Below are positions 1,788 through 46,780 of a DNA stretch of 64,000 nt, piece after piece. Made by a program: the position numbers and the translations under genes. Every line of letters begins with the position of its first letter. Position 1 is the stretch's first letter. Origin of the DNA: Mytilus californianus (Eukaryota); the NCBI RefSeq assembly GCF_021869535.1, contig NW_026262734.1, positions 47,306,001 through 47,370,000 on the forward strand, read 5' to 3'. The notes beneath the pieces are model-generated. The model did no database searches. It saw only the letters and a list, made by a program, of their open reading frames with translations, and was not told where the DNA came from.

Positions 1788-4029
1788 AGCAATCTCTGCA
1801 CCATTACATCACTTCGGAATTATATACAAAACAGTACGGTTACAAAAACAAAAAAAGACAACTTGATGGGGTCTCAATACATTTATAGTAGGCCGAAGAT
1901 ATATACATGTTACATCATCAAAAGTTGTCTCTTTGAATAAATAGATATTTGGGATAAATCTCAATTCGACATTAATCCAACTACACAAAACCAAAGAACA
2001 ATTATAAGTAAACAAATGATCATTAAACCTTTAACATGCGTCTTAATGCTATGATCAGATGGTAGTCCACTAAAGTTGTAAATGAATTTAACAAAGACTT
2101 TTAAAGTCTTCCATCAATACATACTTTACTGGATATGATAACTAGTAGTACTATAATACCAAGCACTATTTAATATACAAAATTATCGTCTTAAAAATCA
2201 TTTAGATTTCTACGTTTGTCCTTAAGCACACCAAATTGTATTTATAGTAGTACAGTATGCTTTTATATCCCATGTTGCTTCTTTTGAAGAACCCACCTAA
2301 TATGTACTAAATAATCATCCTTATACAACATAATCAAATGACTTATTCTCTCGGTTTTTGCTTGTTATCTTGATTTGTAAGCCTTTACTAATAAACTCAA
2401 CATATTAACTTACAAAAATACAGGAAACGAATTGCCTATATTAAATTTTGGCTATTTACACGATGAAAACATTCTCTCAAATAAATTGTATCGTAATACA
2501 CTTACCTTTATTTCCAGTTGCAGTATACAGCTTACCAAATTGATGCCTTTTTATATCGTAAATGAAATATTGTGAGAACCAATGAGAAAAGCGCCTCCCA
2601 CGATTTAACCTGCTTTTGTATATTTTTGGTATATTCAGCAATATTATGAAGTACAATATGTAAACACTTGAAAGAAGAAAGTGTATTCAAAATACATCTA
2701 ATATCTTCTGGTTACACTGTCATGCAAAATTCTTTTCAAAAGATTTGTTTTTAAATTTAAAATTACCGGTTAGTATAGTAACATATCTGAAGTTTTTGAT
2801 GTGTTCAGAAATCTGCATTCATGTATGCATGTAGTGACATGTTACATCATCACTCCACATTATGGAACATAATAAAAACAACCATTGAGTGTTTGTCAAA
2901 CACGTTTTCTTAAAAGTATTTATTTATTTCTGAAAGAGTACGCTTAACTTTCTTCTATTATATGTGGTTTGTAGTTGGGAAATTTTTAACAGCTAGTGCT
3001 TTCTATTTGTTTTATTGCACATAAATGCAGGATTAATTTCATTACGACACCAACCGAGCAACACAGAATCAAAAGAAATCTTATTATGTAATAATTTAAC
3101 TGTAATTAATAAAGTAAAGCCTCTTTTATGTAATGCTGTACATAAATTTTCTTACTTTGTTCTTTATTAAAATGTCGGTAATAAACTGATAAAAATGATA
3201 GAAAAATATGACAATTTAAAGGAGTTTTATCGCGCTTTTATATTGATCTCAATAATAATGATGCAAGTTTGTATAATTAAAAAATACAATAAAGAGGAAC
3301 CACAAATATGACAGTTCCCAATTCTAGAATGTTTGCATTTACTAACGTGTTTAACCTGATTAAAGTCTTTGTATTAATGGTACACAATTTGTCAAGTAAA
3401 ATTGTTTCTTTCGCACGATTTCGACCCTTCAAGAATATATTTAATGATGGTATACTTACGTAGAAATAGTATTAAGATACAAAATAGGGTGTCAAAATTG
3501 ATTGCTTGATTGATTGATTAATATAATTATGCTTTAGGTCGCCTTATCAAAATTCACGAATCGATAAAAAAAAAACACAGAAGGACAATTAACAGCCGCT
3601 AAAAACACCATCTAAGTGAAGATGAATAACATCAACCTCATTAAAAGCACAGTATGGTCTGGAAAGGTAAGTAGTTCAGCATAATTTAAACATACATGTA
3701 CGTCATTATACGTGAAAAGTAACAGCTCGTTCATACGTCGCGTTTGGTGTTGATAAGATATAAGTCATAACAAACGTGATAGTGACGTAACAAAAATCGA
3801 ACATTTAATAACTGCCAACCTAGTAGTGATGTAATTTTTTCTTAAATTCAGTAGCCTTATTGCACGCAAGTACCCTATATAAATGAAATAAAACTTTATA
3901 AATTCCGTGCGTGCAAAGCGCTTTTATGAATTTATCTTTGTCGGGGAGGCTCAAACCCAAACAGTTGAAAAATATGTAAATAAGATATATCTTGACTGGA
4001 AACAAATCCTTTTAAAAACGTTTCAACTG

Positions 4030-14552: not shown

Positions 14553-15769
14553 GTTTTTTGTTCATCCTCATACCTCCTGATGTTATTTCCTAGGGAAGAA
14601 TATCTGGTAAATATTTTCACCAACAGAAAGGTATATCTAAGATTTTGTTTTACAATTTAAAATTAAAAAAGACTGGTGTATAATTTCACAATTTTTTCGG
14701 TTGCATTTCTTCGATGAATTTCGATCACCGTTGTTAAAAACAAAAATCATTTGTTTCGTGTCATTCTTACAAAACTAAATTGAAAATGGTCCGTCTAATG
14801 TACAAATGTTAGGTACATCAACATATTTCAATAATTAAAATAAAAAAAAAAAATTAATTTCATGAAAAGTTTAGACACCGATCCCTTACGGATGCCACAT
14901 CGACTTTTTTATACTTAAACTAATTTAATACGATTACAGCAAACTTGTTTCTTGAATATAAATGATTCAACGATATCATTAACTACATATACTTGTTGAA
15001 AATATATATCAAAGGAACAACGCATTGTGCTTTTGTTTCTCCAGTTAGTAACTTGCTGGAAGTCTGAAATTTGATAAATAATATGATAATATCGTATATC
15101 ATCACACAACTGACCATTAAAACAATTGGCAGGCTTAAAAATGCACTAACTTTGAGTTCCGTTGAATATCGTAAAGTAAACATTTATGGTAATATTTTTT
15201 TTGCTAAAATTTAACTTCATATGGTAAGTTATAAATGTTTCGGTTGATTTTGTTGTCAAAGGACTTTGGACATGATTTACATTTCAATTTTACTAAATAG
15301 GTAAACTGTTATGACCGATATGACAAATTCGGTTTGATTTTAGTTATCGGATTCTTATGAATATAGAAAGAAGTAAGTATTTTCCACTGTTAGTTTTCTT
15401 TTTATTCATTTTTTTTTTTTTTTTGAGGGGGAGTTTAAACAAGACTAAGGTAATATATTGCGCGGGGTTAATATTATTTTGTTGACCGAAATACGCTGAA
15501 AACTGGCTTTATTGACTATTGGCGGTTAAAAGTCTATTGACAAATATCATAAGCTATATAATGTATGTATGTAAAAAATTAAGGTGGGACGTGTTATACT
15601 GAAATTTCAAAGCAAACTGTATTCATTTAACAGACGACAATACAGAATTAAGAAATATTTGTTATCATGTGGGCTTTTTATTACAAAATGCTGGAACCCA
15701 ATTATTGTCAAAGTAACCTATAATATCCATTTGGGTTGTTCACCCAAATTTATCAATATAACGGAACTA

Positions 15770-16300
15770 TAAACAATTGTCATACAAGTGGGGGATTAGC
15801 AAGCTATAAATCAGGTTTATCCTTGCATTTTCATCCGATAATACCTGTAAAATATAAGGAATATGACACTTGTTTTTCTCTCGTTCCGTTGGTTGATAGC
15901 GTTTGGGTTATAGTACCTTTAGCTAGCTATTATTCGTGTGTTTCTTTGTCCTATATGTTCTCCCATTTATTTGTATTGTGGTCCTGTCATGTGATGTTGT
16001 CGTTTTGGTGTTGTGTTTGACGTTGCCATAAAAGCGGGAGGTTTGGCATGCCACAAAACCAGGTTCAACCCACCATTTTTTTCTTAAAATGTCCTGTACC
16101 AAGTCAGGAAAATGGCCATTGTTATATTTTAGTTCGTTTCTGTGTGTGTTACATTTTAATGTTGTGTTTTTGTTGTGTCGTTGTTCTCCTCTTATATTTG
16201 ATGCGTTTCCCTCAGTTTTAGTTTGTAACCCGGATTTGTTTTTATCTCTATCGATTTATGAGTTTCGAACAGCGGTATACTACTGTTGCCTTTATTTATA
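15770..16300. repeat. Interspersed repeat family C copy
   Basis: ccaggttcaacccacc..tgtcctgtaccaagtcagga..aacagcggtatactactgttgcctttat. Confidence 0.7.
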
Positions 16301-23128: not shown

Positions 23129-24070
23129 TTATAATATTACGCCTTTTGGTAAGATGCCACTGCCATCACGGTACACCCTGTTTCTTGATCGGGTAGTGTC
23201 ACAATATCGATTTGAGGCAGCTTTCCAGACGCTATGGCCCATTTGGGTACGAAGTGCATCATACAGTTTAAAAAGACCAAGAATATCAACACTTGCATAT
23301 TTCAACATGTTTTCGTCCAATGGCCTTTTCTCCCAAATGTTACTCGACATATTCATACTTGACCGTCCTTGTAACTTGACATTCAATAATGTGTCGTCAT
23401 TTACGTATAACTCTAGGCAGTGTTTAAGGCTTCTGATCTTAGTATATCCATTTCTGTATATTCGATTGTTTACTTCTAGTATTTGAACGTCTAGTACTCC
23501 ATCGAGTTTAACTTTGTGAAGGTGTAATAAAGCATCGGCATCTTCTCGGCAGTCGAACATCAGTTTTTCTAATCCACTATCCTCGAGTATAGAACGGAGA
23601 CCATCATCAAATACACTGTTCCCTATTTTCAAAATATCGATTAGATAGACCAAATCTTGAGTGCCAATGTTAATCATTGTTACTGATCCAAATCTTGACA
23701 AGTCTACCCCTTCGCAATCAACGGCTATCATTTGTTTATTTTTTATCTTTTCCTGGAGCTCTTTAATGACTTCAATGAACTTATCCTTCGTGTCAACATA
23801 TTTGTAAGTGCTGGTTTCGTTATTACCAATTTTGATGGTATTGGCAGTCATAATATGGTCATCCTTTCTGTCATCTTTTTCTTCTTTCTCATTAATGGGT
23901 TTTTCTATCTGGTCTGCTACTTTCTTGGAAGATTGATTGCTTTTGTCGAAGTTTTCTTTTGTCAATGACCCTTTTGAACTCACTAAAGTGATTTTTGCTT
24001 TTTTGGTCTTGGTTTCACTGGTGGTTTGTTCTTCTGTGTTATCTGTGTCTAATGTGCGTTTAGTTGCCAT
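23129..24070 (-). CDS. Stand-alone DEDDy 3'-5' exonuclease, EXD1/Egalitarian-like (paralog 1), 313 aa
   Basis: ExoI AVDCEG (D118,E120), ExoII KLMFDCREDADAL (D177), ExoIII YASVD (Y258,D262), WEKRPL motif. Basic, low-complexity N-terminus with NLS-like clusters (KR..KTKKAK). Splice acceptor tttttcag| 20 nt upstream of the ATG. Confidence 0.9.
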   Translation of the reverse strand: MATKRTLDTDNTEEQTTSETKTKKAKITLVSSKGSLTKENFDKSNQSSKKVADQIEKPINEKEEKDDRKDDHIMTANTIKIGNNETSTYKYVDTKDKFIEVIKELQEKIKNKQMIAVDCEGVDLSRFGSVTMINIGTQDLVYLIDILKIGNSVFDDGLRSILEDSGLEKLMFDCREDADALLHLHKVKLDGVLDVQILEVNNRIYRNGYTKIRSLKHCLELYVNDDTLLNVKLQGRSSMNMSSNIWEKRPLDENMLKYASVDILGLFKLYDALRTQMGHSVWKAASNRYCDTTRSRNRVYRDGSGILPKGVIL

Positions 24071-24349: not shown

Positions 24350-25690
24350 AGGAATTTGATTTTAACGAAAGAAACCTCTTTATTACTGAAAAATTATTAC
24401 ACCAGGGTTTTTGATATCACAAACCAAATGGGCATTTGAAAAGTCAGAATGCGAGTATATATGGTTTATGTCATTTTTAGTAACAACAGACAAAAGAACT
24501 ATGTCAATTGGACCTGCTTTGATACGATTACTGCCCTTGAATTTTTACTAGATAACAGTTTTGTTCGCTATGGAGATTCCGTATATCGTCAAGTTATCGG
24601 AATTCCAATGGGGACTAACTGTGCACCACTTATTGCTGATCTGTTTCTGTATTGTTATGAGTTACAATTTATGACTAAAATCAGGAAAGACCCATCGAAA
24701 CAACATCTGATAAAAACATTTAATAACACTTTTAGATATTTGGATAATATTTGCTCTCAATAATGACGATTTCAGTATGTACACTAAAGAGATTTATCCT
24801 GCTGAACTGACTTTAAATAAATCTTATACTAACAATGAACACTGCCCTTTCCTGGATATCTATATCTTTAACGGGAAGCTTAATACTAAATTTTTTTTAT
24901 AAAAGAGATGATTTTTCATTTCCTATTGTTAATTGTCCATTTTTAGATGGTGACGTTACCTTGTCACCATCTCATGGTGTTTATATATCTCAACTTGTTC
25001 GATTCGCTCGTGTATGTAACAACGTATTTGATTTTAACGAAAGAAACCTCTGTATTACTGAAAAATTATTACACCAGGGTTTTCGATATCACAAACTAGT
25101 CAAAACATTTACTAAATTTTATCATCGGTACAAGGACATCATTCGTACATGTAAATATAAATCAACATGCAGACATCTTATACGTTCAGGTATTTCACAT
25201 TCAATCTTTTATGATAATATTCTATACAAAGCACAAAAATGTTGACATTCACCTCAAAAGCTAACCAAATCTTTAAACAGACTTATTCAGAAGGGATATA
25301 GTTACGATACTGTTGTCAGGTCATTAAAGATGGCATATTTTGGTATAAGTATTGATTCACTCATAAGATTCTACATTGACTAGAGGTATAGGGGGAAGGT
25401 TGAGATCTCACTAAACATGTTTAATCCCGCCGCATTTTTGCGCATGTTCCAAGTCAGGAGCCTCTGGCCTTTGTTAGTCTTGTATGTTTTTTTGATTTTA
25501 GTTCATTTATATGTTTTGGAGTTTAGTGTGACGTCCTTTTTCAATGAACTAGTACACATTTTTGTTTAGGGGCCAGCTGAAGCATGCCTCCGGGTGCGGG
25601 ATTTTCTAGCTGTGTTGAAGACCCATAGGTGTCCTTCGGCTGTTTTCTGCTCTATGGTTGGGTTGTTGTCTCTTTGACACATTCCCCATT
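24350..25690 (+). mobile_element. 5'-truncated Penelope-like retroelement, second family (RT, thumb, 3' terminal region)
   Basis: ORF 24449-24763 has GIPMGTNCAPLIADLFLYCYE and FRYLDNI. ORF 24835-25245 has GVYISQLVRFAR..KLLHQGF..KFYHRY. Contains stops and frameshifts. The 3' tail (25380-25690) resembles repeat family A. Confidence 0.85.
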
Positions 25691-28770: not shown

Positions 28771-31563
28771 TATAACTTTTTGGTATGTATTTACCCATAT
28801 TTTGCTGTTTTAAATCGTGTTTGCCCCTTAAGATTTTAGGTTTAATGTCAACCTAGTATACACTTGACCAAAGTTGTTTATGATCATACTACATATTTCA
28901 ATTTCATGCAATGGTTATAATTACACACGTTTAGAGTGCCTACTGTATAAAGTGAACTTACAAATACAATCTTTGTAAAATGTTTCACTTGCTACCAAAA
29001 AGTATTAGAGGTGTATATATTTATTTTTGATACCTCATATTTGAATGAAAAATTTACTAAAAAGTATAACAAAAATACCGAACTCATAGTTATATTCAAA
29101 AGGGGAAGTCCATAAAAACCGACAAAATTAAGTTTTAACAATCAACGAATCGAGTGAAAAACAACTGTCAAATTATACTCATATAAACAGAAAAATCAAA
29201 ATGACATGTAAAGTCGTTTCAAACAGATTTAAGTCACATATTAAACATATTCGTTATCATGAGTGACAGGTTATCCAAATCAATAAATCCTGTCAGAATA
29301 ACACCTAATCGAAGACATTCGTAACAAAATCAACCTAAGTTGATCTTAGATAGCCATGCAGTTTAATTATTTCAACGGTGTATTTGACTCTAATCTCAAT
29401 TAATTAGGATTGTCAAATTTCTACCAGAGGCCGGAGATTCTTTCCAGAGACTATGGCTTCAATCAACAAAATAAGTGGCAGTCATACTCAAACAACAATC
29501 AAATGACACGAAGAAAACAACTATAGACAATCGTGGGAGATCAACAATAGCCGCATATCCATACGATATGTGATCTACTGTTGAGGAGTCTATCGAAGTT
29601 GTGAATAATATAACAAAGATCAACTCAATACCAAATTCACATCAAACATTATGGACAATCACTTATGATGTTTCTTACTTGGAAAAGAAAATGCTCATGT
29701 ATTGGGGATGAACTAGCTTCCCAATCTCAAATTACTCCCTTTTAATCTCAGTAATTTGAATAACAAAATATTATTGGAAGAACGTACAATAGAATTGGTA
29801 ATAAGACGATGTGGTATGAGACAACAATCGAACTAAGTCAAATAACGTAGATTTAAGCAATTAAAGGTCATAGTACGGCCTTCAACTATGAGAAGAACCA
29901 ATACCGTCAGCCATTACAGGCTCCGACATGACAACAGTTGTAACAATTCAATCAAAAAAAACCTACCGTTCTGATAAATATAATAAATGAGAAACAGATC
30001 GATAAAACAGACAGCAAACAACAGTAACCACTGAACCACAGGCATAGGATTTTGACGTGGGACACATGTTGTTTTGTCGGAAATTTTAGTTTAGATTGTC
30101 CATGTGAAACTGAAATATCTAAATATAGAAAAGGACGATAATTGATCATGTTGATATTAATGTATGATTTATTTGAAGTAAGTTTCCTTTGATTACTAAC
30201 CGCAGTATAAATTGATTATTTCAAGCTGAAACAAAATTCACCAAGGTAACGGCTAGTGTTATCAAATCGGTCATTTTAACGAAATTTAGACAAATGTTCA
30301 CTACGTTTGGTCATGAGCTGTAAGTCGTAACAGTACAGGAACACATTTTGCTATTACAGGAGCGTTTATTTGTGCCCGGTTTAATGTAGAAACAAAAACA
30401 AATGTACAGGCAAAACCGAAATGAATAATGCATTATCAAAGCATGCTCCATGTTACCAAGAGTAACTTCAGCGGCTTCACCTGCTGATATGATATCATGT
30501 TGTCATCAACACAAGTATCAGCGCATGTACTTCAAAATAGGAAATACAACAACGACATAAACATCGTAAAGGGGAAAAAGATCGTGTTTAAGGCACTAGC
30601 TTTTCTGATCTTACTTCAGCTGTGATCCATTTAATGTTAGTTTGAGTTGCAAAAAGAAACTTTTTCCGTATGTTATATTTCACCTTCAATCAAAAACAGT
30701 CGTTTGAAATTTAATACATTATGTAATTGATACCATGTAACAGAATTATTGATTATTTTGTAAAGGTAATGACAAGATAAAAGTGTGACAATGATCTGGT
30801 TATTCGTGTATTGTTCACCTTGGATCTCAGGCAATTATTATGTCATGTTGATCTCTTTTTCAGATGACTGCACGCTAATTTGAATGTAACAATATTGTTT
30901 TTATACTGCAATAAAAAACGACTACAATTATACTTATGAAGATGTTAACACAAAAATAAAACGTATGTTCCATCCCTAACGAGCACCAATCTGTGAAGAA
31001 AGTTGACGTGACATGACATCGACATTGCACGAAATATTACTTTGTGACTATTCAAGTACATGTAGGTAAAGACAACAGGAAGTGTTGCAGTATAAATAAT
31101 AAATCAATGATAAGAAATACTTTAGTACAAGAATATATGTAGGAAAGAAAATCATGAAACATCATATTCCTCGAGGTGACAAATACACATTATGTGACGT
31201 CATGATAAAATGAATACTGCAACTCTTTTGAGTTATGTTGCTATCGAATCTGTTATTTGTGCTCGCTAAAGCCAAAATGTGTAAGTAAACGAAGAAAATT
31301 ATAAATATTCTGGTACACATGTAAATGAAGATTCATAAATATAACTGTATTATTAGAGTCTCTGGTTGTGGTTTTAATTTCTCTGATCTATAAACTTTTG
31401 CGACATTTGCCATAATTCTTTAAGTTTTAAGGATTAATTTTCTCTGTTCTTTAAGTCTTGTCAAGATCCTTTTTTAAAGATACTCGCTCTGAGTCTACTT
31501 GTAGCTCCTGTCCACAAAAACATCATGAGCGTGTAGAGTGATTAAACCATGCTAAAGGAAATT

Positions 31564-31609
31564 ACGCCAGACGCACGTTTTGTCTACAAAACACTCATCA
31601 GTGACGCTC
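31564..31609 (-). ncRNA. Minimal type I hammerhead ribozyme (PLE-associated), probably inactivated
   Basis: Minus strand: gagcgtca CTGATGA gtg-ttttgta-gac AAAA c-gtgc-GTC tggcgt. Stem I pairs gcgtca with tggcgt. Core GAAA reads AAAA (G12>A at 31581), and stem II has a mismatch. Confidence 0.8.
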
Positions 31610-32525
31610 GAATAAAACAGATAAAAGGTCAAAAGAAAAGAATGCCATATACATCATACACATCAGTATACGATCATATAAGCTTCAACAAGGTTAGGCA
31701 ATATTTTGTTTAAATAATACTAAAAATGGTCGTGTATTCGTTGACATATAACTTAATCGTGTTAATACTAAGCACTGTCTGAACTCAATTTATTTTAGTA
31801 ATATATTACTTTTATACAGTAACTGTACAGTGATTAAATGAAAAATCTCAAACAATCATATCGCACGTTTAACAACTTTTTGAAAATCAACGTATATTAC
31901 ATTTTCGGAAAGCTACTTTCACTTTTGATATATTGAAGTTTTACTTTTAAATATACCCGATTTTTAACAATGTTTCAATGTTTCTAAAAATAGGAATTAA
32001 TTCATGTCAGAGATAATAGCTAATATGAAAGCTGTTGGTTGTTGATGTGGTCTACTGTACTGTCCGTTGTAGTGTCCATTATTTTAGATGCTATTTATAA
32101 ATTATTAATCTTTTTAAATACAAGTTTTTAACAAATCATTGCGTGAGAAAAAAAACTTGATGTTAGATCGGGTGAATCAATATTCAATCTCAAAATAAAG
32201 TTCACATGATATTTTATCCTACGTAACCTTTACCAGTTGTCACTATCTTTATCATAGTACAGTATTTGAATGATATGCAATTTACATTATTGGTTTTTAT
32301 TTTTCTGTAAAAATTGTTGGGTTGTTTTTAGCGTGAGAATTATACTGCTGCTCCCATTCATTGGACCAAAACTTTACTATACTAATACCAGTATATGATA
32401 TTAGTTAATTACTGCACTTATAATATATATGTGCTATTTCCGTTACCTTGCATTTAAAGGAATAATTTACACTATTCTTCCTGTAATTATGTAGTAATAT
32501 TTGATAGTATGTATAACTGAAATGT

Positions 32526-33389
32526 CTATTCAATTAGAAGTCCGTTTATGAAATTAAATTTCGCATCATATAACTGTTGTCTGCTGAATGATTTTTGTAT
32601 TTTTGATTTTTGCTTGTATGATTTAAATCTTTTATCTTGCTTCTTGCGAATTAGAATTCTGCGAAACACAGGTTCATCTGCACCGTCCCATGGCAGCAAA
32701 AAGGATTCAACAAATTCTTCTGATTTCGTAGGTGGGCAATAATATTTAGGAGCGAGACAGAAGATATTTGGATTTTGTTTCATTGTTGTCCATGCTTCAT
32801 TTGATTCTGTCTCCCAATAACGGTGTTCAGATGAAACAATAACAAAGTCTTTTGTTTTTCTCACATATTCATCGATTAGTTTAGCGCATGCATGTACTCT
32901 CACCATGCATGGAATATAGTGAGAAAATATACAAATCAGATATGTTGTGTTTTTCCGATATTTTTGAAAGAACTGAGACCTCATTCTATCTAGAAATTTG
33001 ATATCATTTAAACATCTTGATGTCTCTCCGTTCAGATTACACATCACTCTACGAATGCGACCATCTGGGTCCAATAATCGTTCTTCGCCATGCATACTAG
33101 GATCTGGGAGGTTCAATAAGACAGCGATTCTTTCAAAACACAGACTGTAATTTTCAAAACAACCGACTTCGTCATTATCCCTTAGAATTCTTTCTAATTT
33201 ATTCCTAGGTTCAACAATAAATCGAAAATCTTCATTTTCAATTTCTCCAAGAGATACGATGGAGGCTACAACATACTGTTTCCGTTTCGATCCAATTTTT
33301 CGAAACAACAGAGGCAAGGATTTCTTACCAAATTCTCTGAGTAGTTTAAATAATTTTGCCACTGAATCAGTTCTCAATTGATTATTCAT
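32526..33389 (-). CDS. Putative Zn-dependent cytidine-deaminase-fold protein, AID/APOBEC-like, 287 aa
   Basis: H100-G-E102 (SMHGEERLL); hydrophobic strand YLICIFSHYIP leading to P160-C161-x6-C168 (PCMVRVHAC); then helix AKLIDEYV, strand FVIVSSEHRY and helix NEAWTTMK. This is the order expected in AID/APOBEC-like folds. An 864-bp open frame is unlikely by chance in such AT-rich DNA. Candidate acceptor ttcag| 5 nt upstream of the ATG; AATAAA about 225 nt after the stop. The family was assigned by motif only. Confidence 0.7.
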   Translation of the reverse strand: MNNQLRTDSVAKLFKLLREFGKKSLPLLFRKIGSKRKQYVVASIVSLGEIENEDFRFIVEPRNKLERILRDNDEVGCFENYSLCFERIAVLLNLPDPSMHGEERLLDPDGRIRRVMCNLNGETSRCLNDIKFLDRMRSQFFQKYRKNTTYLICIFSHYIPCMVRVHACAKLIDEYVRKTKDFVIVSSEHRYWETESNEAWTTMKQNPNIFCLAPKYYCPPTKSEEFVESFLLPWDGADEPVFRRILIRKKQDKRFKSYKQKSKIQKSFSRQQLYDAKFNFINGLLIE

Positions 33390-36294
33390 TAGGCCTGAAC
33401 CATGTATGCTTTAATATCCTTGTTTTTTAGTTGATTTTCACTTGTTCCGTTGATCGATTGATTTTGTCAGTGTTTATGGACTTCCCCTTTTTGAATTTGC
33501 CTTGGAGTTCGGTATTTTTGTTATACTTTTTTATCCAATATTTGTGAAAGTGAAAGTTGACGGACTAAACTTGTACCTAGAATTTTATAGATTCAAATGT
33601 TGATTTGTTCAAGTATTTGATAAACAAATTTACCATATCGAGTTATCTGTAACCAATCATGACAACCTGTATCTCATTCGGAAAATAGTAACTATACAGC
33701 ATACTGTAAGTAAACGTTTTTAAACAGGTTTTAAAGAGGAATCTTTCTCAGTGTTGATTAATTCGTCCAATTTTAGTAAAACAAATTCTGAATGCTATAT
33801 CTTCCATGTTAATATTTCATTCCATATCCCATGACGATGACAAATGATGACAATTTTGTATTTTATATCAGTTTGAAAATACTATTAAACTTTTACAAAA
33901 GGAAGTAGTTTAAAACATAGTAAACAAATATAAAAATATTTCATGGACTATTTAAGTAGCGTTAGAATATACTATTTAAATACTTATGTACATGTTTCGA
34001 GTTTATATTGGCGTAAACAAATCTGCAAACATGTGTACAAAATTGTATACAGGACACGGTATGTTTTCGATCTCCTTATTTTGGTGCTCTGTCTTTTTGG
34101 CAGCACGTCTAGTCCCATTCTTATACTATATATATTTGCATACTTTTTAATGTATAATTTCTTGATGAACTTCAACAAAATTATTCAATTGTTGTTGTAT
34201 GCAGATCTACATTTCAAGTTGAACTATGTTTTCACAGTTCCATTTCTTTTGATCGGTTTACACAATTTGTTACGAGCGCCTTGTTTTATTTTGTAGAAAG
34301 CCTTAAGCTTTTGATTCTTTAGTAAGTTATCAAATATCCCATTATATACGTACATTAATACTAAATAAATGAGTTAATGTGTATTAACAGTTAATAAGAC
34401 TGTGTGTAACAGTAACCCTACGGCACACACATACGAAAGGACATCTACATGTTAACTTACGATTTTTAGCAACAGACAAGTGTGAGACTATAACAGATAT
34501 GTCAGTACAAAATTTCCTTCATAAGAAATACTTCATAAGATATTACAAAATAAAAAAACAAACAAACAAAGAAGACCCTCTAGAGTAAGGACACGCAAAT
34601 AACAAATAATAACAGTGAACGGTCCCAATGTTTCCTGTTCCAGATAAGCATTTCTACAAATAAAGTCTTTTCAGTGATGCTAGATGGCAAAAGATTTGAT
34701 TTGAAACCCCAAAACCTTAAACATACGTTTGGCGAGCGATTTAGCATAACAAGGCCAAAAGTAAAGCTTATCCCGGACAAAGAAGTCAGTGCTATGCTTG
34801 ATGGCAAGTGGCTGGTGGTGTAAGTTAGCATCAATCCCCTTTATTATCTAGATCAAAGGAATACAAATGTAAATAACAGAACATACCATCAAAATCAGAT
34901 CAGGTAAGGCACTTTCCTCTATTATACCGGTAAAATAAATATCAATATAAATAAGTAGATGTGGTATGAGTGCCAATTAGACAACTCTCCATCCTAGTCA
35001 CAATGTATAAAAAGTTAACAATAATCATTATAGATCAAAGTACGGCATATAATTGTTAAACTCAAACCCATATTCAACAACAAAATCAGTACACTCCAGT
35101 ATAATATAATTGTGAATCGGGCTTCACAAGGGATGTTTTCTCATAGTCCCTGTGAAGTTCAGAATAACATATAATATTCTTACTGTAAAATGAATTGTAA
35201 AGAAAATATTACAGACATCTGAGAGATGTGCACTCCAAAGAAGGAGCTTACAAAATATCACCATCACAAATATGATAAAATAGGAAAGGCAAGTTCGTTC
35301 TGTTTGTCATCAAGTATCAAGACTACCATAACGGTCTTATAAAATTTACCAGATACATTTTAACATCCTATTTTCCACATAACCGAAAACATTTAGAATG
35401 GCATATTCTGCAATGAGGTGTTTTTTTTTCATTAAAAGTTCAGTTTACAAAAATTATCACGCGAACACTTTAACATAATACCATAGTCACGTTATACCGT
35501 GATAACCGGACTGTAGTTCACGAACAATTGGGTGTGTCAAATAGAATATTGATGGCTGCCTTCTGTATACAAATAAACAATGCAGTATAGCTGATTATAT
35601 CTGATTTTAATTTTTATATTTCTCCTTGAGACTTTGTATTTCTTTTACAGTTTACGTACAAAAATATTTCTCAACAATCTAGTAAAAAATTCATATGGAT
35701 TTTGAATATCATTCTGATGTCATTGCAGGTTATAGGTATAATATGTAAATAGAAATGCCTGAACTACTCACGTGATCTTATGCTAAATTAGCACACAAAA
35801 GTCGCCGTTTGAACAATATAAAATTACACTACCAAGTCCTGTCGGAATAGGAACATTAAAATCAATGCTCCTAGTAGAGTGAGCACCACACTCTCTGCAC
35901 GTTTGAGGGATTCTTGCAACGACTATCTGAAGGGTCCGTTGCAAGCATCGAAAAATAGTTCTGAATTTCTAATTTTGTATAAATATTTTGATTTGGCTAC
36001 TACAATATAGAATTATAACTATGCAGTGCGTGTATGTATACCTATCACTTCCGTTATTTTACAGTTATTTCCCTTATTATATCATCAGAATTTATTTTAA
36101 AATCATTTTGATCTTGTTCTTGTGTATACGTATTTTTTCATATATTTAAGTGTTTTAAACTTTATTCCTTCAATATGTCCTTTATTATCTGCTTTTTCTT
36201 TAAAAAAAAAAATATATATAAAAACGATTCGATGCCGCAAAAAGTTTCGCGCGTACAGGTCTGCTATGAACGTTTAATTGAACGATTTTTACTA

Positions 36295-36790: not shown

Positions 36791-38848
36791 GTATGAAAAA
36801 AATTAACAGTTTGAAGGTAAACTAATGAGAACTTGATCCAATCAAATTGCGTAAGATTCAAAAACAATGACTGGTCCACATTATAATAGTGATTTACGGA
36901 AAGTCTCGGTACCGACTGTTTACACCAATTTTGACAGATAGAATGAATGGGATCGTCTTAAAATTAAAAAAAGTACGAAGTAATTAGCATTTCAAGTTTT
37001 ATATAAGTTGCCAATAACTTTTAAACAAAATTTTACACAATGACTTATTAAATTCAATAAAGATTGTTGTCTGTTCACAAGTCCTGCAGAGGTCTCCGCA
37101 ATATGTCTGAGCTTTTGTCTTGCGTGCATCCATAAAGGTTTTCTATTGAAATTAACATGAGGAGATGTGGTATGATTGTCAATGAGACAACTATCAACCA
37201 GAGTTAAAATGAAATGGTATTAAGCAATTATAGGCCACCGTATGGCCTTCAATAATGAGAAACTCATTGCTGTATAGTCGGATATAAAAATCCCCGATAG
37301 GAAAAATTTGAAACAGTTCAAACGAAAAAACTAACGGCCTAATTTATAAAAAAAAAAAGAATCAATGAATCAACGACAACCATTGTACTACAAGCTCTTG
37401 ACTTTGAACAGTAACATCAATAATGTGGCGGGGTTGAGCATGTTTGTGAGCGCCCAACCCTCTTCTAACCTGGGAAATATTTGAATACATGCATTATTTC
37501 TGCTTTAATTGGGGCAACACGAACGTCGAAAATCAACGAGAGAACATGGTATGATGAATACGATTGAAGCCGAATTATATACAAAATATCCTGATTTTTT
37601 TGGAGATAATTTGTAGGGACTCCTAGTATCTTGTCATTTTCTCAATTTATACAAGAAAATAGTGGAATTCTAGATTCGTAAAGCTTTTTGATGAACAGAT
37701 TGAGATTGAGGAATGCATTTAATATCAAAAATGATATGTAACGTAAATTTTCTGGCTTAAAAAGTATTTGAACCCAATTTTTTGTCAGCACGGATTATAT
37801 GTTCCCGCTTCTGCCCCTCCCCCTAGTATACCCTTTCCACTATATTTCTAACGGAAACTGGACGTTTTAATATGTGTACACTATGGCTGTGTAGGTGTAG
37901 AAAATAAAAATAAAAAACATCATTCAACAGTACTTATCTGGCTTGATACACATGTGTATGAGCTTGACGACATATCCGATTTAAATGTTCTGTTTCGGAA
38001 TATCTGGACTCAAATTTTGCTGCTCATTGTCGATTGAGTATTAATATGCTTCGTTCATGGGACTGATTTTATTTATACAAAAATACCTTATGATTCAAGT
38101 GCGCCGTAAAAATTACATTTGAGACGACCCCTTTCATTTTATCTGTCAAAGTCGGTGTCAACAGTCGGTACAAAGACTTTCCCTAAATCTCTAATAGTAG
38201 ATAAGTATATACATATAGTATATAAAAGTAATATGGGTAAACTTGGTAGGGAGAAAATGACAGATAATTTAAGTTCATTTTTTGCAAAAACGAATAAGAA
38301 TTTGTCAACCAGTACTACACAATTCAATTGCCTCTATTTATGTATATATCTATATTTATACTGCACTCGTTCTATTTGAACAGTCAAAACGCGTTGACCG
38401 TATATTTCTATGTCATATACAGTCACTGACCTGATATCACTTTTCCTCATGAATATTTAAATAGAAATTGCCGAAATTATAATTAATTATTCATACGACC
38501 TAATCAACCTGTTCTTGTTTCCAATGTATACAACGACTCAAACTTATTTCTTTTGCAATTTTTAGAAAAAAAACATATTTCACTTGTTAATTTTTTTGGT
38601 TTGCAAACTATAAATTATTATGTTTTATGCTTATTGTTGATAATTTTAGTTCATTCTCAAACAAGTTCGTTCACCATCGATTGCGGGTTTCAACAGGTAA
38701 TGTACATTTCATTGTGTTGTATATTTCTCCGCCTGCATGATATGAGGCCTTTTTATAAAAGGGGGAAGTTTCCCAATATTTAAATCAAATAATAACATTA
38801 ACACATTAAACAACAATTGAAAATGTTTTTTTTTAGATTGCAGTATAA

Positions 38849-45697: not shown

Positions 45698-46780
45698 TTA
45701 CAGGATTATATCACGCACGCGTGTCGGCAAAAGAGCATCTCCATCACGATGCGTTCTTGCTCGAGATCTTTTGTTGTCACAATACAGGCTTGATGCAGCT
45801 TTCCAGGTGTTGTGTGGCATTATGTTTCTAAATTTATCATATACGTGAAAAAGTCCTAGAACATCTACAGCTGCATATTTCAGCATACTTTCACTCAGGG
45901 GTCTTTTTTCCCATATTTTGGTTGTCCATAGCATAATTTGTCGTCCTTGTTTTTTCAACCTAAGGAGAGTACTGTTAGACGGAAAACTTTCCAGGCATGT
46001 CTCAAGACTTGCCAATAACGTGTTATGTCTTTTTCTTTTCATCCTGTTCCTCGCTTCTAACAATTGAACATCTAGTACTCCGTCCAACTTTACTTTATAC
46101 AGATGAAATAAAGCATCCGCGTCTTCTCGACAGTCAAACATCAATTTTTCAATACTATTATTTTCAAGTATACAGCGAAGACCGTCATCAAATACGCTAT
46201 TCCCTATCCTCAAAACATCAATTAAATAGACCATATCTCTAGTACCTATATTAACCATCGTTACGCATCCAAATCTGGATAAGTCTACCCCTTCACAGTC
46301 CAATGATATGGTTTTGCCGTCTTTAATCATGTTGTTAAGCTCATTGATTGCAGAGATGTATTTTTCTTTCGTGTCAATATACTTGTAAGAACTTGTTTCG
46401 TTTATTCCTACTTGTATTGTCCTGCTTTGGGTTATTTCTCCTGCTGATTCTCTCCTATATAAAACATCTTCTGCGTTGGAATCGCTAGTGTTATTTTCGT
46501 TGCTGGTTGAACCGTCGGATTGCTGTTGTTGATTTTCGTTGTCTGGTTCGGAATTACGTAGGTGTATTGGCCCGCTTTGGGTTATTTCCCCTGCTGATTC
46601 TCTCCTATATATACATATAAGATTTTCTGTGTTGGAATCGTTAGTATCATTTGCATTGCTTTCATTTACAGAGGTATCGCTACTAGCTGAATGATGTTTT
46701 AGCTTCTTATTGCTGGTTGGACCATCGGATTGCTGCTGTTGGTCTTCATCATCTGGTTCTGATTTACGCTTGGTTGCCAT
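45698..46780 (-). CDS. Stand-alone DEDDy 3'-5' exonuclease, EXD1/Egalitarian-like (paralog 2), 360 aa
   Basis: ExoI SLDCEG (D161,E163), ExoII KLMFDCREDADAL (D220), ExoIII YAAVD (Y302,D306). By hand count, 86 of 116 core residues are identical to paralog 1. NLS-like KRK..KKLK; internally duplicated N-terminus; AATAAA just after the stop (45687-45692). Confidence 0.9.
   Translation of the reverse strand: MATKRKSEPDDEDQQQQSDGPTSNKKLKHHSASSDTSVNESNANDTNDSNTENLICIYRRESAGEITQSGPIHLRNSEPDNENQQQQSDGSTSNENNTSDSNAEDVLYRRESAGEITQSRTIQVGINETSSYKYIDTKEKYISAINELNNMIKDGKTISLDCEGVDLSRFGCVTMVNIGTRDMVYLIDVLRIGNSVFDDGLRCILENNSIEKLMFDCREDADALFHLYKVKLDGVLDVQLLEARNRMKRKRHNTLLASLETCLESFPSNSTLLRLKKQGRQIMLWTTKIWEKRPLSESMLKYAAVDVLGLFHVYDKFRNIMPHNTWKAASSLYCDNKRSRARTHRDGDALLPTRVRDIIL

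What the first reader, a model, noticed from the sequence alone, without database searches (positions are those of the whole stretch)
32526..33389. Unannotated ORF with AID/APOBEC-like deaminase motifs and APOBEC4-type PCx6C spacing
Seen: SMHGEERLL (H100/E102) and IFSHYIPCMVRVHAC (C161/C168), followed by a helix-strand-helix pattern ending in a xxxRY strand. Established: Zn-dependent deaminases use HxE...PCxnC. Most AID/APOBECs have PCx2C, whereas APOBEC4 has PCx6C (SPCNEANHCC, with His at the same fifth position as here). HxExxLL also recalls SNAD-type invertebrate/fish deaminases. Inference: a divergent invertebrate AID/APOBEC-like enzyme with an intact catalytic Glu and a Lys/Arg-rich C-terminal tail that may bind nucleic acid or direct nuclear import. 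Its substrate is unknown.
Basis: partly seen in the sequence, partly recalled or inferred. Interest (0 to 1): 0.85.

Follow-up and report, generated by a model that had tools for sequence, protein, structure and literature searches.

The report
Bivalve-only APOBEC-like deaminase gene
This is a real, transcribed, intron-free mollusc gene for a zinc-dependent deaminase whose predicted structure looks most like the vertebrate AID/APOBEC DNA/RNA mutators; it belongs to an unnamed, bivalve-restricted family that current protein-family databases do not recognise.

Summary
The 287-aa ORF at 32526-33389 (minus strand) is real. An ORF this long is not expected by chance in 31% GC DNA. It is under purifying selection (dN/dS 0.22 against a 79%-identical orthologue) and is covered by intron-free RNA contigs.

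An exhaustive search found about 72 related cluster representatives. Every named one is from a bivalve and is annotated "uncharacterized". Across 40 full-length members (18% mean column identity) the only invariant residues are H100, E102, P160, C161 and C168, and 53 of 55 motif-bearing members have exactly PCx6C.

AlphaFold models of this protein and of a 20%-identical member (pLDDT 85-86) show a helix-4-type deaminase fold. Both match APOBEC3/AID best (Z 10.3 and 9.6).

No Pfam deaminase model reaches its threshold. The family also lacks the features that define the APOBEC4, SNAD and XOO_2897 clades.

My reading: an intracellular, probably active polynucleotide cytosine deaminase from a new bivalve clade, plausibly used against viruses or retroelements. 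Substrate and activity are untested. The scan's earlier notes cover only this same stretch, not other DNA.

The parts
32526..33389 (-). Complete single-exon coding sequence (287 codons plus stop) of the deaminase-like protein
   Evidence: ORF list. In-frame stop 8 codons upstream of the ATG. dN/dS 0.22 at dS 0.46 against orthologue P0001/L001. Chance expectation about 2e-5 per window.
31863..33890 (-). Approximate extent of the intron-free transcript, about 2 kb. The 5' UTR is about 500 nt and the 3' UTR about 660 nt. The exact ends were not determined.
   Evidence: RNA-run contigs are colinear with the genome: 31956-33440, 31863-32928, 32930-33502, 33503-33890 and 32263-32880. Flanking bins are silent apart from short repeats. 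In the stranded raw reads every pair over the gene has its first mate on +, which fits an RNA from the minus strand. Raw-read depth is low, about 0.5-1x with 6% of the run read.
32745..33284 (-). Deaminase-fold core, residues 36-215: beta1 39-46, beta2 82-92, alpha2 101-106, beta3 150-158, alpha3 168-179, beta4 183-189, alpha4 196-204, beta5 209-212
   Evidence: AlphaFold2 model, pLDDT above 90 over most of this range. VIA-align Z 10.3 against APOBEC3A with 142-148 residues aligned over model 20-234. The same topology appears in a 20%-identical family member.
33084..33092 (-). Codons for H100-G101-E102, the HxE motif: first Zn ligand and catalytic Glu, at the N-terminus of helix 2
   Evidence: H and E are invariant in 40/40 full-length members. 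Helix 2 is the most conserved element, at 0.62 bits mean entropy.
32886..32912 (-). Codons for P160-C161-x6-C168, the PCx6C motif. C161 follows strand 3 and C168 is the first residue of helix 3. Y158 is the aromatic residue two positions before the Pro.
   Evidence: P, C and C are invariant. 53 of 55 motif-bearing representatives have exactly six residues between the cysteines. His two residues before the second Cys occurs in 44/55. Tyr/Phe at P-2 occurs in 46/55.
33147..33251 (-). Family-specific helical insert between strands 1 and 2, residues 47-81
   Evidence: Helices 47-51 and 56-71 in the model. The equivalent helices 56-60 and 65-75 appear in the Mercenaria member. The insert is present in all 40 members at 25-51 residues.
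32943..33068 (-). Family-specific insert between helix 2 and strand 3, residues 108-149. It lengthens the HxE-to-PC spacer to 57 residues.
   Evidence: Helices 111-116 and 132-143. Present in all members at 36-59 residues. The spacer is 51-74 residues in 52 of the 55 motif-bearing representatives, against 30 in APOBEC4 (PMC4889046).
32529..32669 (-). Lys/Arg-rich C-terminal tail, residues 241-287, modelled as one long helix
   Evidence: pI 10.9 and 14 K/R in 47 residues. In about half of the 23 family members checked, K+R makes up at least 20% of the C-terminal region. Modelled as helix 242-286 at moderate confidence, pLDDT 60-81. It evolves faster than the core: dN/dS 0.32 against 0.18.
33455..33540 (.). 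Short high-copy interspersed repeat inside the 5' UTR. It is not part of the gene's function.
   Evidence: Very high depth on both strands in all RNA runs. An inverted copy lies at 29059-29131.

Best explanation
The ORF encodes an intracellular zinc-dependent deaminase of the helix-4 division of the deaminase fold. Its closest relatives by structure are the AID/APOBEC polynucleotide cytosine deaminases. It belongs to a deep, bivalve-restricted, so far unnamed clade.

Proposed mechanism (inferred from the fold and motifs): H100, C161 and C168 hold a Zn2+ that activates water. E102 shuttles the proton. A flipped-out cytosine in single-stranded DNA or RNA is converted to uracil.

The variable loops 1, 3 and 7 and the two family-specific helical inserts would set target preference. 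The basic C-terminal helix would add non-specific nucleic-acid binding or nuclear targeting.

The likely biological role is mutational restriction of viruses or retroelements, as in other invertebrate AID/APOBEC-like expansions.

Shown here: the gene is real, expressed and under selection; the fold; the invariance of the active-site residues.

Inferred only: Zn binding, cytosine as the base, a polynucleotide as substrate, and the immune role.
For: Gene reality:
- ORF statistics.
- dN/dS 0.22 overall and 0.19 over residues 90-200.
- Intron-free RNA contigs with silent flanks and minus-strand read orientation.

Family:
- 73 representatives at E<1e-3 among 1.84 billion proteins, one of them (P0063) spurious.
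- Named members come only from the bivalves Mytilus, Dreissena, Mya, Mactra and Mercenaria.

Active site:
- H100, E102, P160, C161 and C168 are the only invariant columns in 40 members at 18% mean identity.
- PCx6C occurs in 53/55 motif-bearing representatives.
- N93 just before loop 3 is conserved in 39/40. From my own knowledge, not tested here, the equivalent Asn contacts the substrate sugar in APOBECs and TadA.

Fold:
- Model pLDDT 85.9, pTM 0.75.
- All 50 top Foldseek hits are APOBEC3/AID, with probability about 1.
- VIA-align Z 10.3 (rmsd 3.6-3.9 A, 142-148 residues aligned) against APOBEC3A/B/G.
- In the Foldseek-independent wide search, ranks 1-33 are all deaminase-fold proteins.
- A 20%-identical member gives the same topology, and its top 29 rows are APOBEC3 at Z 9.6-7.9.
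- Helix 4 precedes strand 5, which marks the helix-4 division.

AAD-type features (criteria from PMC3239186):
- Aromatic residue two positions before the Pro, 36/40.
- Aromatic or His in loop 7, 37/40.
- Hydrophobic residue ending strand 5, 39/40.
- Two helices after strand 5.

Other support:
- Protein-language-model neighbours are APOBEC4, APOBEC3, APOBEC1 and SNAD3 clusters; all ten best family-bearing hits fall in one clan.
- Sub-threshold Pfam hits in members fall only on deaminase-clan families.
- The substrate loops are more variable (2.4-2.9 bits) than the catalytic helix (0.62 bits).
- Local clustering: extra family fragments beside the Mytilus gene, and Dreissena locus tags 044286 and 044290.
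- Invertebrate AADs occur as lineage-specific expansions (PMC5889660). Sea-urchin and Lingula members have vertebrate-like cytidine deaminase activity and are induced by pathogen challenge (PMC5956068).
Against: - No Pfam deaminase model reaches its threshold for this protein, even at E<=10. Among the 20 members scanned in detail, only seven gave any deaminase-family hit, all at 12-20 bits against cut-offs of about 27.
- A family profile finds no solved deaminase by HMMER.
- In the wide structural search Rib2 deaminase (Z 8.9), ADAT2/3 (8.3) and TadA (7.8) score close to the APOBEC representatives (8.6-8.8). The fold alone therefore does not prove AAD membership or cytosine specificity.
- The 'D-aromatic' motif at the start of helix 5, listed as an AAD synapomorphy, is not seen.
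- This protein and its orthologue have Ser187 where 35/40 members have Tyr at the end of strand 4.
- APOBEC4, the only well-known PCx6C enzyme, has no detectable deaminase activity (PMC4889046).
- Whole-gene dN/dS of 0.22 does not by itself indicate an arms race.
- Expression in the one raw RNA run is low.
- Zn-site geometry could not be measured.
Confidence: 0.68

Rival explanations
1. It is a deaminase-fold enzyme, but from a different helix-4 lineage than AID/APOBEC. It could be a descendant of TadA/ADAT2-like adenosine deaminases, or of a bacterial XOO_2897/OTT_1508-type toxin deaminase acquired by an early bivalve. Its base or substrate (adenine, tRNA, dsDNA) could then differ from that of APOBECs.
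For: - The wide structural search scores Rib2 8.9, ADAT2/3 8.3 and TadA 7.8 against APOBEC representatives at 8.6-8.8.
- The most frequent weak Pfam hit among members is XOO_2897-deam: 8 of 48 members, best E 1.9e-5.
- All family genes examined are intron-free, which is compatible with a transfer origin.
Against: - With close homologues included, APOBEC3A/B/G reach Z 10.3 and 9.6 in two independent models.
- Foldseek and the language-model search both put AADs first.
- XOO_2897 deaminases lack strand 5 and everything after helix 4. Both models here have strand 5 plus two further helices.
- TadA-type enzymes have PCxxC and no aromatic residue before the Pro (my own knowledge).
- The exhaustive phmmer search returned only this family and no recognisably bacterial relatives.
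Confidence: 0.15
2. It is a catalytically silent nucleic-acid-binding protein that keeps the deaminase scaffold, as is suspected for APOBEC4 and APOBEC2. It would act through binding, using the basic N-terminal helix and C-terminal tail, rather than through editing.
For: - The PCx6C spacing and a basic C-terminal tract are shared with human APOBEC4. APOBEC4 shows no deaminase activity in vitro or in cells, and its effect on HIV does not need E95 (PMC4889046).
- Tyr187 at the end of strand 4, conserved in the family, is Ser in this gene and its orthologue.
- The N-terminal 35 residues (pI 11.2) and the tail (pI 10.9) are strongly basic.
Against: The five Zn/catalytic residues are the only invariant positions across a family this divergent, and helix 2 is by far the most constrained element. 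That is the pattern expected if catalysis is what is being selected. APOBEC2 and APOBEC4 also keep these residues, so this argument is not decisive.
Confidence: 0.12
3. It is a metabolic deaminase acting on free bases, nucleotides or a cofactor precursor, like dCMP deaminase, cytosine deaminase or Rib2/RibD.
For: Rib2 deaminase is nominally the top row of the wide structural search at Z 8.9. dCMP deaminases and RibD score 7.8.
Against: - Metabolic deaminases are widespread and slowly evolving, and Pfam finds them easily. This family is confined to bivalves, has 18% mean column identity, occurs in several copies per genome with decaying fragments, and has no Pfam match.
- It carries basic terminal extensions typical of nucleic-acid binders.
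- It has the loop-5 and loop-7 aromatic residues of polynucleotide deaminases.
Confidence: 0.05

Closest known systems
Vertebrate APOBEC3A/B/G/H and AID (solved structures such as 8fij, 8fik, 5cqh, 8cx2)
   Same: - Best structural matches for two family members: Z 10.3 and 9.6, 130-148 residues aligned, rmsd 3.3-4.1 A.
- Same strand and helix order.
- HxE at helix 2, and PC...C spanning loop 5 and helix 3.
- An aromatic residue before the Pro and an aromatic residue in loop 7.
- Two helices after strand 5.
   Different: - Only 12-17% identity in the structural alignments, and no HMMER or Pfam link.
- PCx6C instead of PCx2C.
- HxE-to-PC spacer of 57 residues, against about 23-30.
- Extra helical inserts between beta1/beta2 and between alpha2/beta3.
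- A long basic C-terminal helix.
- Single-exon gene.
APOBEC4 and the cnidaria-algae-APOBEC4 clade (Krishnan et al. 2018, PMC5889660)
   Same: - PCx6C spacing (PMC4889046).
- Basic C-terminal tract.
- APOBEC4 clusters are the best named neighbours in the ESM Atlas: features 0.90, structure TM 0.42.
- 4 of 48 members give weak Pfam APOBEC4 hits.
   Different: - The clade-defining metal-chelating insert (two Cys plus a His in loop 1, and a Cys in loop 3) is absent. Loop 1 is GSKRKQ and loop 3 is NLPDPSM, and no Cys or His is conserved there.
- The spacer is 57 residues, not 30.
- The Pfam APOBEC4 and APOBEC4_like models are not passed.
Invertebrate 'classical' AID/APOBEC-like deaminases (Krishnan et al. 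2018; sea-urchin and Lingula AIDLs, Liu et al. 2018, PMC5956068)
   Same: - Lineage-specific, multi-copy, fast-diverging intracellular deaminases of lophotrochozoans.
- Variable loops 1, 3 and 7.
- Presumably the same biology, since pathogen-inducible cytidine deaminases have been demonstrated in sea urchin and Lingula.
   Different: - ESM Atlas clusters of mollusc AADs do carry the Pfam APOBEC1/3/4_like families (rows 9 and 16). This family carries none.
- It lacks the loop-1/loop-7 metal-chelating insert of the lophotrochozoan-echinoderm clade.
- Whether it appears in the 2018 supplementary catalogue could not be checked.
Xanthomonas XOO_2897-like bacterial toxin deaminases (Pfam PF14440; Iyer et al. 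2011, PMC3239186)
   Same: - Helix-4 division.
[quoted passage not shown]
- A loop-7 aromatic residue.
- The commonest weak Pfam hit among members: 8 of 48, best E 1.9e-5.
   Different: - XOO_2897 deaminases are truncated after helix 4 and lack strand 5. This family has strand 5 plus two further helices.
- The hits inspected in detail reach 14-20 bits against a cut-off of 27.
- The genes are eukaryotic and have no toxin-delivery domains.
SNAD1/2 secreted AID/APOBEC-like deaminases
   Same: [quoted passage not shown] One is also present here.
- Weak SNAD4 and SNAD3 signals.
   Different: - No signal peptide: the highest 12-residue hydropathy near the N-terminus is 0.57, and the segment is modelled as an amphipathic helix packed on the core.
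- The Pfam SNAD models are not passed.

Membership tests
Deaminase superfamily (CDA fold), helix-4 division | Alpha/beta fold with a five-stranded sheet interleaved with helices | tested here: met
   Two AlphaFold models with the same element order. Ranks 1-33 of the Foldseek-independent search are all deaminase-fold proteins. The 2-1-3-4-5 strand order itself could not be read, because coordinates are not exposed.
Deaminase superfamily (CDA fold), helix-4 division | HxE (or CxE) at helix 2, and CxnC spanning loop 5 and the start of helix 3 (PMC5889660) | tested here: met
   H100 and E102 sit at the N-terminus of helix 101-106. C161 follows strand 150-158. C168 is the first residue of helix 168-179. 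All are invariant in 40/40 members.
Deaminase superfamily (CDA fold), helix-4 division | Helix 4 lies between strands 4 and 5, rather than a C-terminal beta-hairpin | tested here: met
   beta4 183-189, helix 196-204, beta5 209-212. The Mercenaria member has beta4 200-207, helix 214-221, beta5 226-229.
Deaminase superfamily (CDA fold), helix-4 division | The three ligands converge on one Zn site | not testable with these tools
   Model coordinates are not returned. Only the canonical secondary-structure positions support this.
AID/APOBEC-like deaminases (AADs) | Passes a curated AAD sequence model (Pfam APOBEC1/2/3/3H/4, APOBEC4_like, APOBEC_N, NAD1/2, SNAD1-4) | tested here: not met
   No hit for the window protein at E<=10. 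The hits inspected in detail reach 12-20 bits against cut-offs of about 27.
AID/APOBEC-like deaminases (AADs) | AADs are the nearest structural neighbours, ahead of other deaminase clades | tested here: met
   Foldseek top 50 are all APOBEC3/AID. Z 10.3 and 9.6 against about 7.8-8.9 for Rib2, ADAT2 and TadA. The margin is modest, at 1-2 Z units.
AID/APOBEC-like deaminases (AADs) | [quoted passage not shown] | tested here: inconclusive
   The loop is 6-12 residues and has an aromatic or His at position 191 in 37/40 members. Whether 6 residues counts as 'extended' cannot be judged without a reference alignment.
AID/APOBEC-like deaminases (AADs) | Large hydrophobic residue at the end of strand 5 | tested here: met
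   Position 212 is L, V, I, F, Y or M in 39/40 members.
AID/APOBEC-like deaminases (AADs) | 'D-aromatic' motif at the start of helix 5 | tested here: not met
   No conserved Asp-aromatic pair in columns 213-225. The alignment is poor in this region.
AID/APOBEC-like deaminases (AADs) | Two additional helices after strand 5 | tested here: met
   Helices 220-230 and 242-286. In the second model, 231-250 (pLDDT 80-98) and 282-302.
AID/APOBEC-like deaminases (AADs) | Aromatic residue before the PC motif (Trp in vertebrate AADs) | tested here: met
   Tyr or Phe at P-2 in 46/55 representatives and 36/40 aligned members.
AID/APOBEC-like deaminases (AADs) | Cytosine-to-uracil deamination in single-stranded nucleic acid | not testable with these tools
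   Needs biochemistry.
APOBEC4 / cnidaria-algae-APOBEC4 clade | PCx6C zinc motif | tested here: met
   Exactly x6 in 53/55 representatives. APOBEC4 is HxEx30PCx6C (PMC4889046).
APOBEC4 / cnidaria-algae-APOBEC4 clade | Second metal-chelating insert: two Cys plus a His from loop 1, and a Cys from loop 3 (PMC5889660) | tested here: not met
   Loop 1 (33-38) and loop 3 (93-99) contain no Cys or His here. No conserved Cys or His exists outside the catalytic site.
SNAD (secreted AADs) | N-terminal signal peptide | tested here: not met
   No hydrophobic N-terminal segment. Residues 7-32 form a confident amphipathic helix.
XOO_2897-like toxin deaminases | Truncation after helix 4, with strand 5 absent | tested here: not met
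   Strand 5 and two further helices are present in both models. The criterion comes from PMC3239186.
Lophotrochozoan-echinoderm AAD clade with metal insert | Metal-chelating His in loop 1 plus three Cys/His in loop 7 | tested here: not met
   No conserved Cys or His in loop 1 or loop 7 columns. The criterion comes from PMC5889660.

The most novel reading that the evidence does not exclude
The family is the protostome counterpart of APOBEC4. The shared features would be PCx6C with His at the fifth spacer position, a basic C-terminal tract and, as I recall but did not check, a single coding exon.

If so, an APOBEC4-like lineage predates the bilaterian split. The expanded, diverse bivalve genes would give an experimentally tractable route to the still unknown substrate of APOBEC4, and a source of structurally new deaminase scaffolds.

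A second, less likely novel reading: together with the two flanking co-oriented DEDD 3'-5' exonuclease genes, it forms an 'edit and degrade' defence locus.
Probability: 0.15. Interest if true: 0.75.

Novelty: new variant of a known kind. Interest (0 to 1): 0.55.

Why it matters
AID/APOBEC-type mutators underlie antibody diversification and antiviral restriction in vertebrates. Since 2018 they have been known to exist in invertebrates as scattered, fast-evolving expansions.

This gene marks a whole bivalve clade (about 72 cluster representatives at 50% identity) that is annotated only as hypothetical. It passes no curated deaminase model, so domain-based surveys of deaminases would miss it, whether for immunity or for base-editor discovery.

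Its architecture is distinctive:
- an invariant HxE...PCx6C site with a spacer about twice the usual length;
- two helical inserts next to the substrate loops;
- a basic terminal helix.

If the enzymes are active, they add an unexplored set of nucleic-acid editors in animals that suffer large herpesvirus and retroelement burdens. They would also be the first accessible PCx6C deaminases to set beside the enigmatic APOBEC4.

Tried and rejected
- **Pfam on the ORF at E<=10:** nothing.
- **phmmer and two family-profile hmmsearches against PDB sequences:** only chance hits, namely mL106, chitinase-like protein and YopH.
- **Word-indexed homologue search.** The single-sequence search found only the orthologue. 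The profile search returned only the orthologue and P0063, a PKD-domain metaclust protein that I treat as spurious and removed from later alignments.
- **The search for related loci in viral and prokaryotic collections:** I judged a degenerate DNA-pattern scan too unspecific, at about 23-32 bits against 1e12 bases, and did not run it.
- **Conserved neighbourhood.** The two flanking exonuclease genes have no counterpart within +/-10 kb of the Mytilus or ENA homologues. This tests the adjacency only partly, because the window distances are 8.5 and 12.3 kb.
- **Transposon cargo.** The only flanking repeat is a pair of inverted copies of a short high-copy element, one of them in the 5' UTR. I do not take this as evidence that the gene is mobile.
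- **Viral origin of the metagenome-derived members.** Their contigs are gene-sparse and look eukaryotic.
- **Supplementary tables of Krishnan et al. 2018:** not held, so I could not check whether any member was already catalogued.
- **Zn-site distances:** model coordinates are not exposed.
- **Profile-profile comparison with reference AAD clades:** not possible, because no reference AAD sequences could be obtained through the tools, and I did not type any from memory.
Full report
**1. The observation**

The window is AT-rich (about 31% GC) and contains no N. The ORF at 32526-33389 on the minus strand is listed exactly as reported: 287 codons and an ATG start. An in-frame stop lies eight codons upstream.

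At this base composition a stop-free run of 287 codons has probability 1.5e-10, so about 2e-5 such ORFs are expected per window. It is one of only three ORFs above 280 aa in 64 kb.

The C-terminal 47 residues hold 14 Lys/Arg and have pI 10.9.

**2. It is a real, expressed gene**

One close orthologue exists: P0001, 79-80% identical, on a 901-nt Logan contig.

A codon alignment gives dS 0.46, dN 0.10 and dN/dS 0.22. The ratio is 0.18 for residues 1-235 and 0.32 for the tail. That is clear purifying selection.

Sequencing runs identify the source as a mollusc. When 5.9 kb around the gene was laid against one raw RNA-seq run and three contig sets (one from an RNA-Seq library, two only guessed to be RNA), coverage was confined to about 31,860-33,890, with silent flanks apart from three short high-copy repeats.

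The contigs are colinear with the genome, for example a 1,484-nt piece at 31956-33440. In the stranded raw reads every pair over the gene has its first mate on +, so the RNA comes from the minus strand.

The gene is therefore a single-exon transcription unit of about 2 kb. Raw-read depth is low, about 0.5-1x with 6% of the run read.

**3. The family**

An exhaustive phmmer search of 1.84 billion cluster representatives found 73 proteins at E<1e-3, and 42 at E<1e-10. One of them, P0063, is a PKD-domain protein that I treat as spurious.

Every member that carries a source name is from a bivalve: Mytilus coruscus, Dreissena polymorpha, Mya arenaria, Mactra antiquata and Mercenaria mercenaria. All are called 'uncharacterized' or 'hypothetical'.

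Members recovered from metagenomes sit on gene-sparse contigs that look eukaryotic.

The coding regions of the two homologues I fetched with flanks are also uninterrupted. The Mytilus locus carries two further family fragments about 6 kb to either side. Two Dreissena members are four locus tags apart.

A quick maximum-likelihood tree shows several deep subgroups. Mya has members in two distant subgroups. The window gene pairs with P0001 (SH-aLRT 99), and its nearest named relative is a Mytilus protein.

The picture is an old family in bivalves that keeps duplicating and decaying.

**4. The active-site signature**

In an alignment of 40 full-length members with 18% mean column identity, the only invariant columns are H100, E102, P160, C161 and C168. 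Q38, E49, R87, N93, R104, D107 and S156 are at least 90% conserved.

Among the 55 representatives long enough to carry both motifs:
- 53 have exactly six residues between the cysteines;
- the first motif is always H-[G/T/R]-E;
- the spacer from HxE to PC is 51-74 residues in 52 of them;
- Tyr or Phe lies two residues before the Pro in 46;
- His lies two residues before the second Cys in 44, and is replaced by Tyr or Phe in 7. This suggests a packing or stacking role rather than metal binding (inference).

Helix 2 (HGEARLLD) is by far the most constrained element, at 0.62 bits. Loops 1 and 3 and the two inserts are the most variable, at 2.7-2.9 bits.

**5. The fold**

The AlphaFold2 model built on the family alignment is confident: pLDDT 85.9, pTM 0.75, and above 90 for most of residues 10-210.

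Its element order is: alpha1 7-32, beta1 39-46, two insert helices 47-71, beta2 82-92, alpha2 101-106, insert helices 111-116 and 132-143, beta3 150-158, alpha3 168-179, beta4 183-189, alpha4 196-204, beta5 209-212, alpha5 220-230, and a long basic helix 242-286.

H100/E102 open helix 2, C161 follows strand 3, and C168 opens helix 3. These are the positions that define the deaminase Zn site. Helix 4 precedes strand 5, which is the 'helix-4 division' (definitions in PMC5889660).

Structural search results:
- Foldseek against the PDB returns only APOBEC3 and AID chains in its top 50, with probability about 1 and E from 3.7e-4. TM-scores are modest because of the extra terminal helices.
- VIA-align gives Z 10.3-8.7 for those chains, with 134-152 residues aligned at rmsd 3.3-4.4 A over model residues 20-234.
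- The ESM-Atlas structure search finds the family's own mollusc cluster (TM 0.77), then APOBEC4, APOBEC1 and APOBEC3 clusters at TM 0.39-0.42.
- The language-model search likewise lists APOBEC4, APOBEC3 and SNAD3 clusters after the family's own.

A second model, of the 20%-identical Mercenaria member, has pLDDT 85.3 and pTM 0.79. It has the same topology and the same two inserts. Its top 29 rows are again APOBEC3 at Z 9.6-7.9, ahead of ADAT2 and Rib2 at 7.8.

**6. Limits of the AID/APOBEC assignment**

The Foldseek-independent search over 48,161 PDB cluster representatives confirms the fold: ranks 1-33 are all deaminase-fold proteins.

It separates clades only weakly, however: Rib2 8.9, APOBEC3G 8.8, APOBEC3H 8.7, AID 8.6, ADAT2/3 8.3, APOBEC1 7.9, and TadA, RibD and dCMP deaminase 7.8.

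By sequence the link is sub-threshold everywhere:
- There is no Pfam hit for this protein at E<=10.
- Among 48 members the recurring weak hits are XOO_2897-deam (8 members), SNAD4 (5), APOBEC4 (4), APOBEC_N (3), NAD1 (3) and APOBEC2 (2). All belong to the deaminase clan.
- Of the 20 members scanned in detail, only seven gave any deaminase-family hit, all at 12-20 bits against cut-offs of about 27.
- Family profiles find no solved deaminase.

Of the AAD synapomorphies listed by Iyer et al. 2011 (PMC3239186), four are present:
- the loop-7 aromatic residue (37/40);
- the hydrophobic end of strand 5 (39/40);
- the aromatic residue before PC (36/40);
- two helices after strand 5.

The 'D-aromatic' start of helix 5 is not seen.

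I therefore put 'deaminase-fold enzyme with an intact site' at about 0.9, and 'member of the AID/APOBEC radiation' at about 0.7.

**7. Which clade?**

- **APOBEC4.** The PCx6C spacing really is APOBEC4-like: HxEx30PCx6C in PMC4889046. But the APOBEC4/cnidaria-algae clade is defined by a second metal-binding insert, built from two Cys and a His in loop 1 and a Cys in loop 3 (PMC5889660). Loops 1 (GSKRKQ) and 3 (NLPDPSM) here have none, and no such residue is conserved in the family.
- **Lophotrochozoan-echinoderm clade.** Its loop-1/loop-7 metal insert is also absent.
- **SNADs.** They are secreted, whereas this protein has no signal peptide. [quoted passage not shown]
- **XOO_2897 toxins.** They share the loop-5 insert but lack strand 5.
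- **Other mollusc AADs.** Atlas clusters of them do carry Pfam APOBEC families. This family is separate from those.

I conclude that it is a distinct bivalve clade. Its defining features are HxE-x(51-74)-PCx6C, the two inserts and, in about half of the members, a basic tail. I could not check the 2018 supplementary catalogue.

**8. Mechanism and role**

Shown: the gene is real, it is expressed, the fold, and the invariant site.

Inferred:
- H100, C161 and C168 bind Zn, and E102 acts as proton shuttle.
- A flipped-out cytosine in ssDNA or RNA is the substrate. This rests on the AAD-like loop-5 and loop-7 aromatics and on the near-invariant Asn93 before loop 3, whose sugar-contacting role in APOBEC/TadA is my own knowledge and was not tested.
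- The variable loops and inserts tune target choice.
- The basic tail helps nucleic-acid binding or localisation.

An antiviral or anti-retroelement role is suggested by the lineage-specific, multi-copy, decaying pattern, and by precedent. Invertebrate AADs occur as lineage-specific expansions (PMC5889660). Sea-urchin and Lingula members have vertebrate-like cytidine deaminase activity and are induced by pathogen challenge (PMC5956068).

Cautions:
- APOBEC4 itself has no detectable activity.
- This gene and its orthologue have Ser187 where 35/40 relatives have Tyr.
- Whole-gene dN/dS is 0.22.
- Expression in the one raw RNA run is low.

**9. Context**

Two co-oriented, intron-free DEDD 3'-5' exonuclease genes flank the deaminase gene at 8.5 and 12.3 kb. 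They lie at 23129-24070 and 45698-46780, hit Pfam DNA_pol_A_exo1 at E about 1e-21, and are 54% identical to each other.

No exonuclease lies within +/-10 kb of the two homologues I fetched, so the link is unsupported but not excluded.

Another note (s1-330645) reports an LTR element with strand-biased C depletion elsewhere in this genome. It is an untested lead that would fit an active cytosine deaminase.

**10. Verdict and compliance**

The thing is a new clade-level variant of a known kind of enzyme. It is interesting mainly because it is invisible to current family models and shares the rare PCx6C site with APOBEC4.

Operators' notes were followed. The read-laying run used 5,901 letters. 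No N was present, and nothing needed to be read through a stop.

Noticed in passing
window 23129-24070 (-) and 45698-46780 (-): Two intron-free paralogous ORFs (313 and 360 aa, 54% identical). Each has a Pfam DNA_pol_A_exo1 3'-5' exonuclease domain (E about 1e-21) and a low-complexity charged N-terminus. They are co-oriented with the deaminase gene and flank it. No counterpart lies within +/-10 kb of two deaminase homologues in other bivalves.
   Followed up: partly
window 702-1040 (+), 24449-24763 (+), 24835-25245 (+): ORF fragments sharing the motif GIPMGTNCAPL(L/I)ADLFLY. They look like decayed reverse-transcriptase pieces of a retroelement, but give no Pfam hit at E<=0.01.
   Followed up: partly
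window 31563-31608, 33455-33540 (inverted copy at 29059-29131), 34940-35005 (diverged copy at 37150-37211): Short interspersed repeats with very high depth on both strands in all RNA runs. One lies in the 5' UTR of the deaminase transcript. Their identity was not determined.
   Followed up: no
L002 (Mytilus coruscus contig) 3289-3543 (-) and 15673-16107 (+): Two partial copies of the same deaminase family lie about 6 kb either side of the intact Mytilus gene. This suggests a local cluster with decaying duplicates.
   Followed up: partly
window 32829-32831 (codon of residue 187): This gene and its 79% orthologue have Ser at the end of strand 4, where 35 of 40 family members have Tyr (consensus IVxYE). 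This could change the substrate pocket in this sub-lineage.
   Followed up: no
L003 6172-7146 (+): A 324-aa ORF about 3 kb upstream of the P0013 homologue. By eye it looks like the C-terminal part of a non-LTR retrotransposon ORF2. It was not scanned against Pfam here, and the locus table shows no precomputed Pfam hit for it.
   Followed up: no
protein P0063 (metaclust, 274 aa): A PKD/Y_Y_Y-domain protein scored E 4.5e-6 in three stretches against the query, and even better against the first family profile, which included it. It lacks the deaminase motifs and was treated as a spurious, repeat-driven match.
   Followed up: partly
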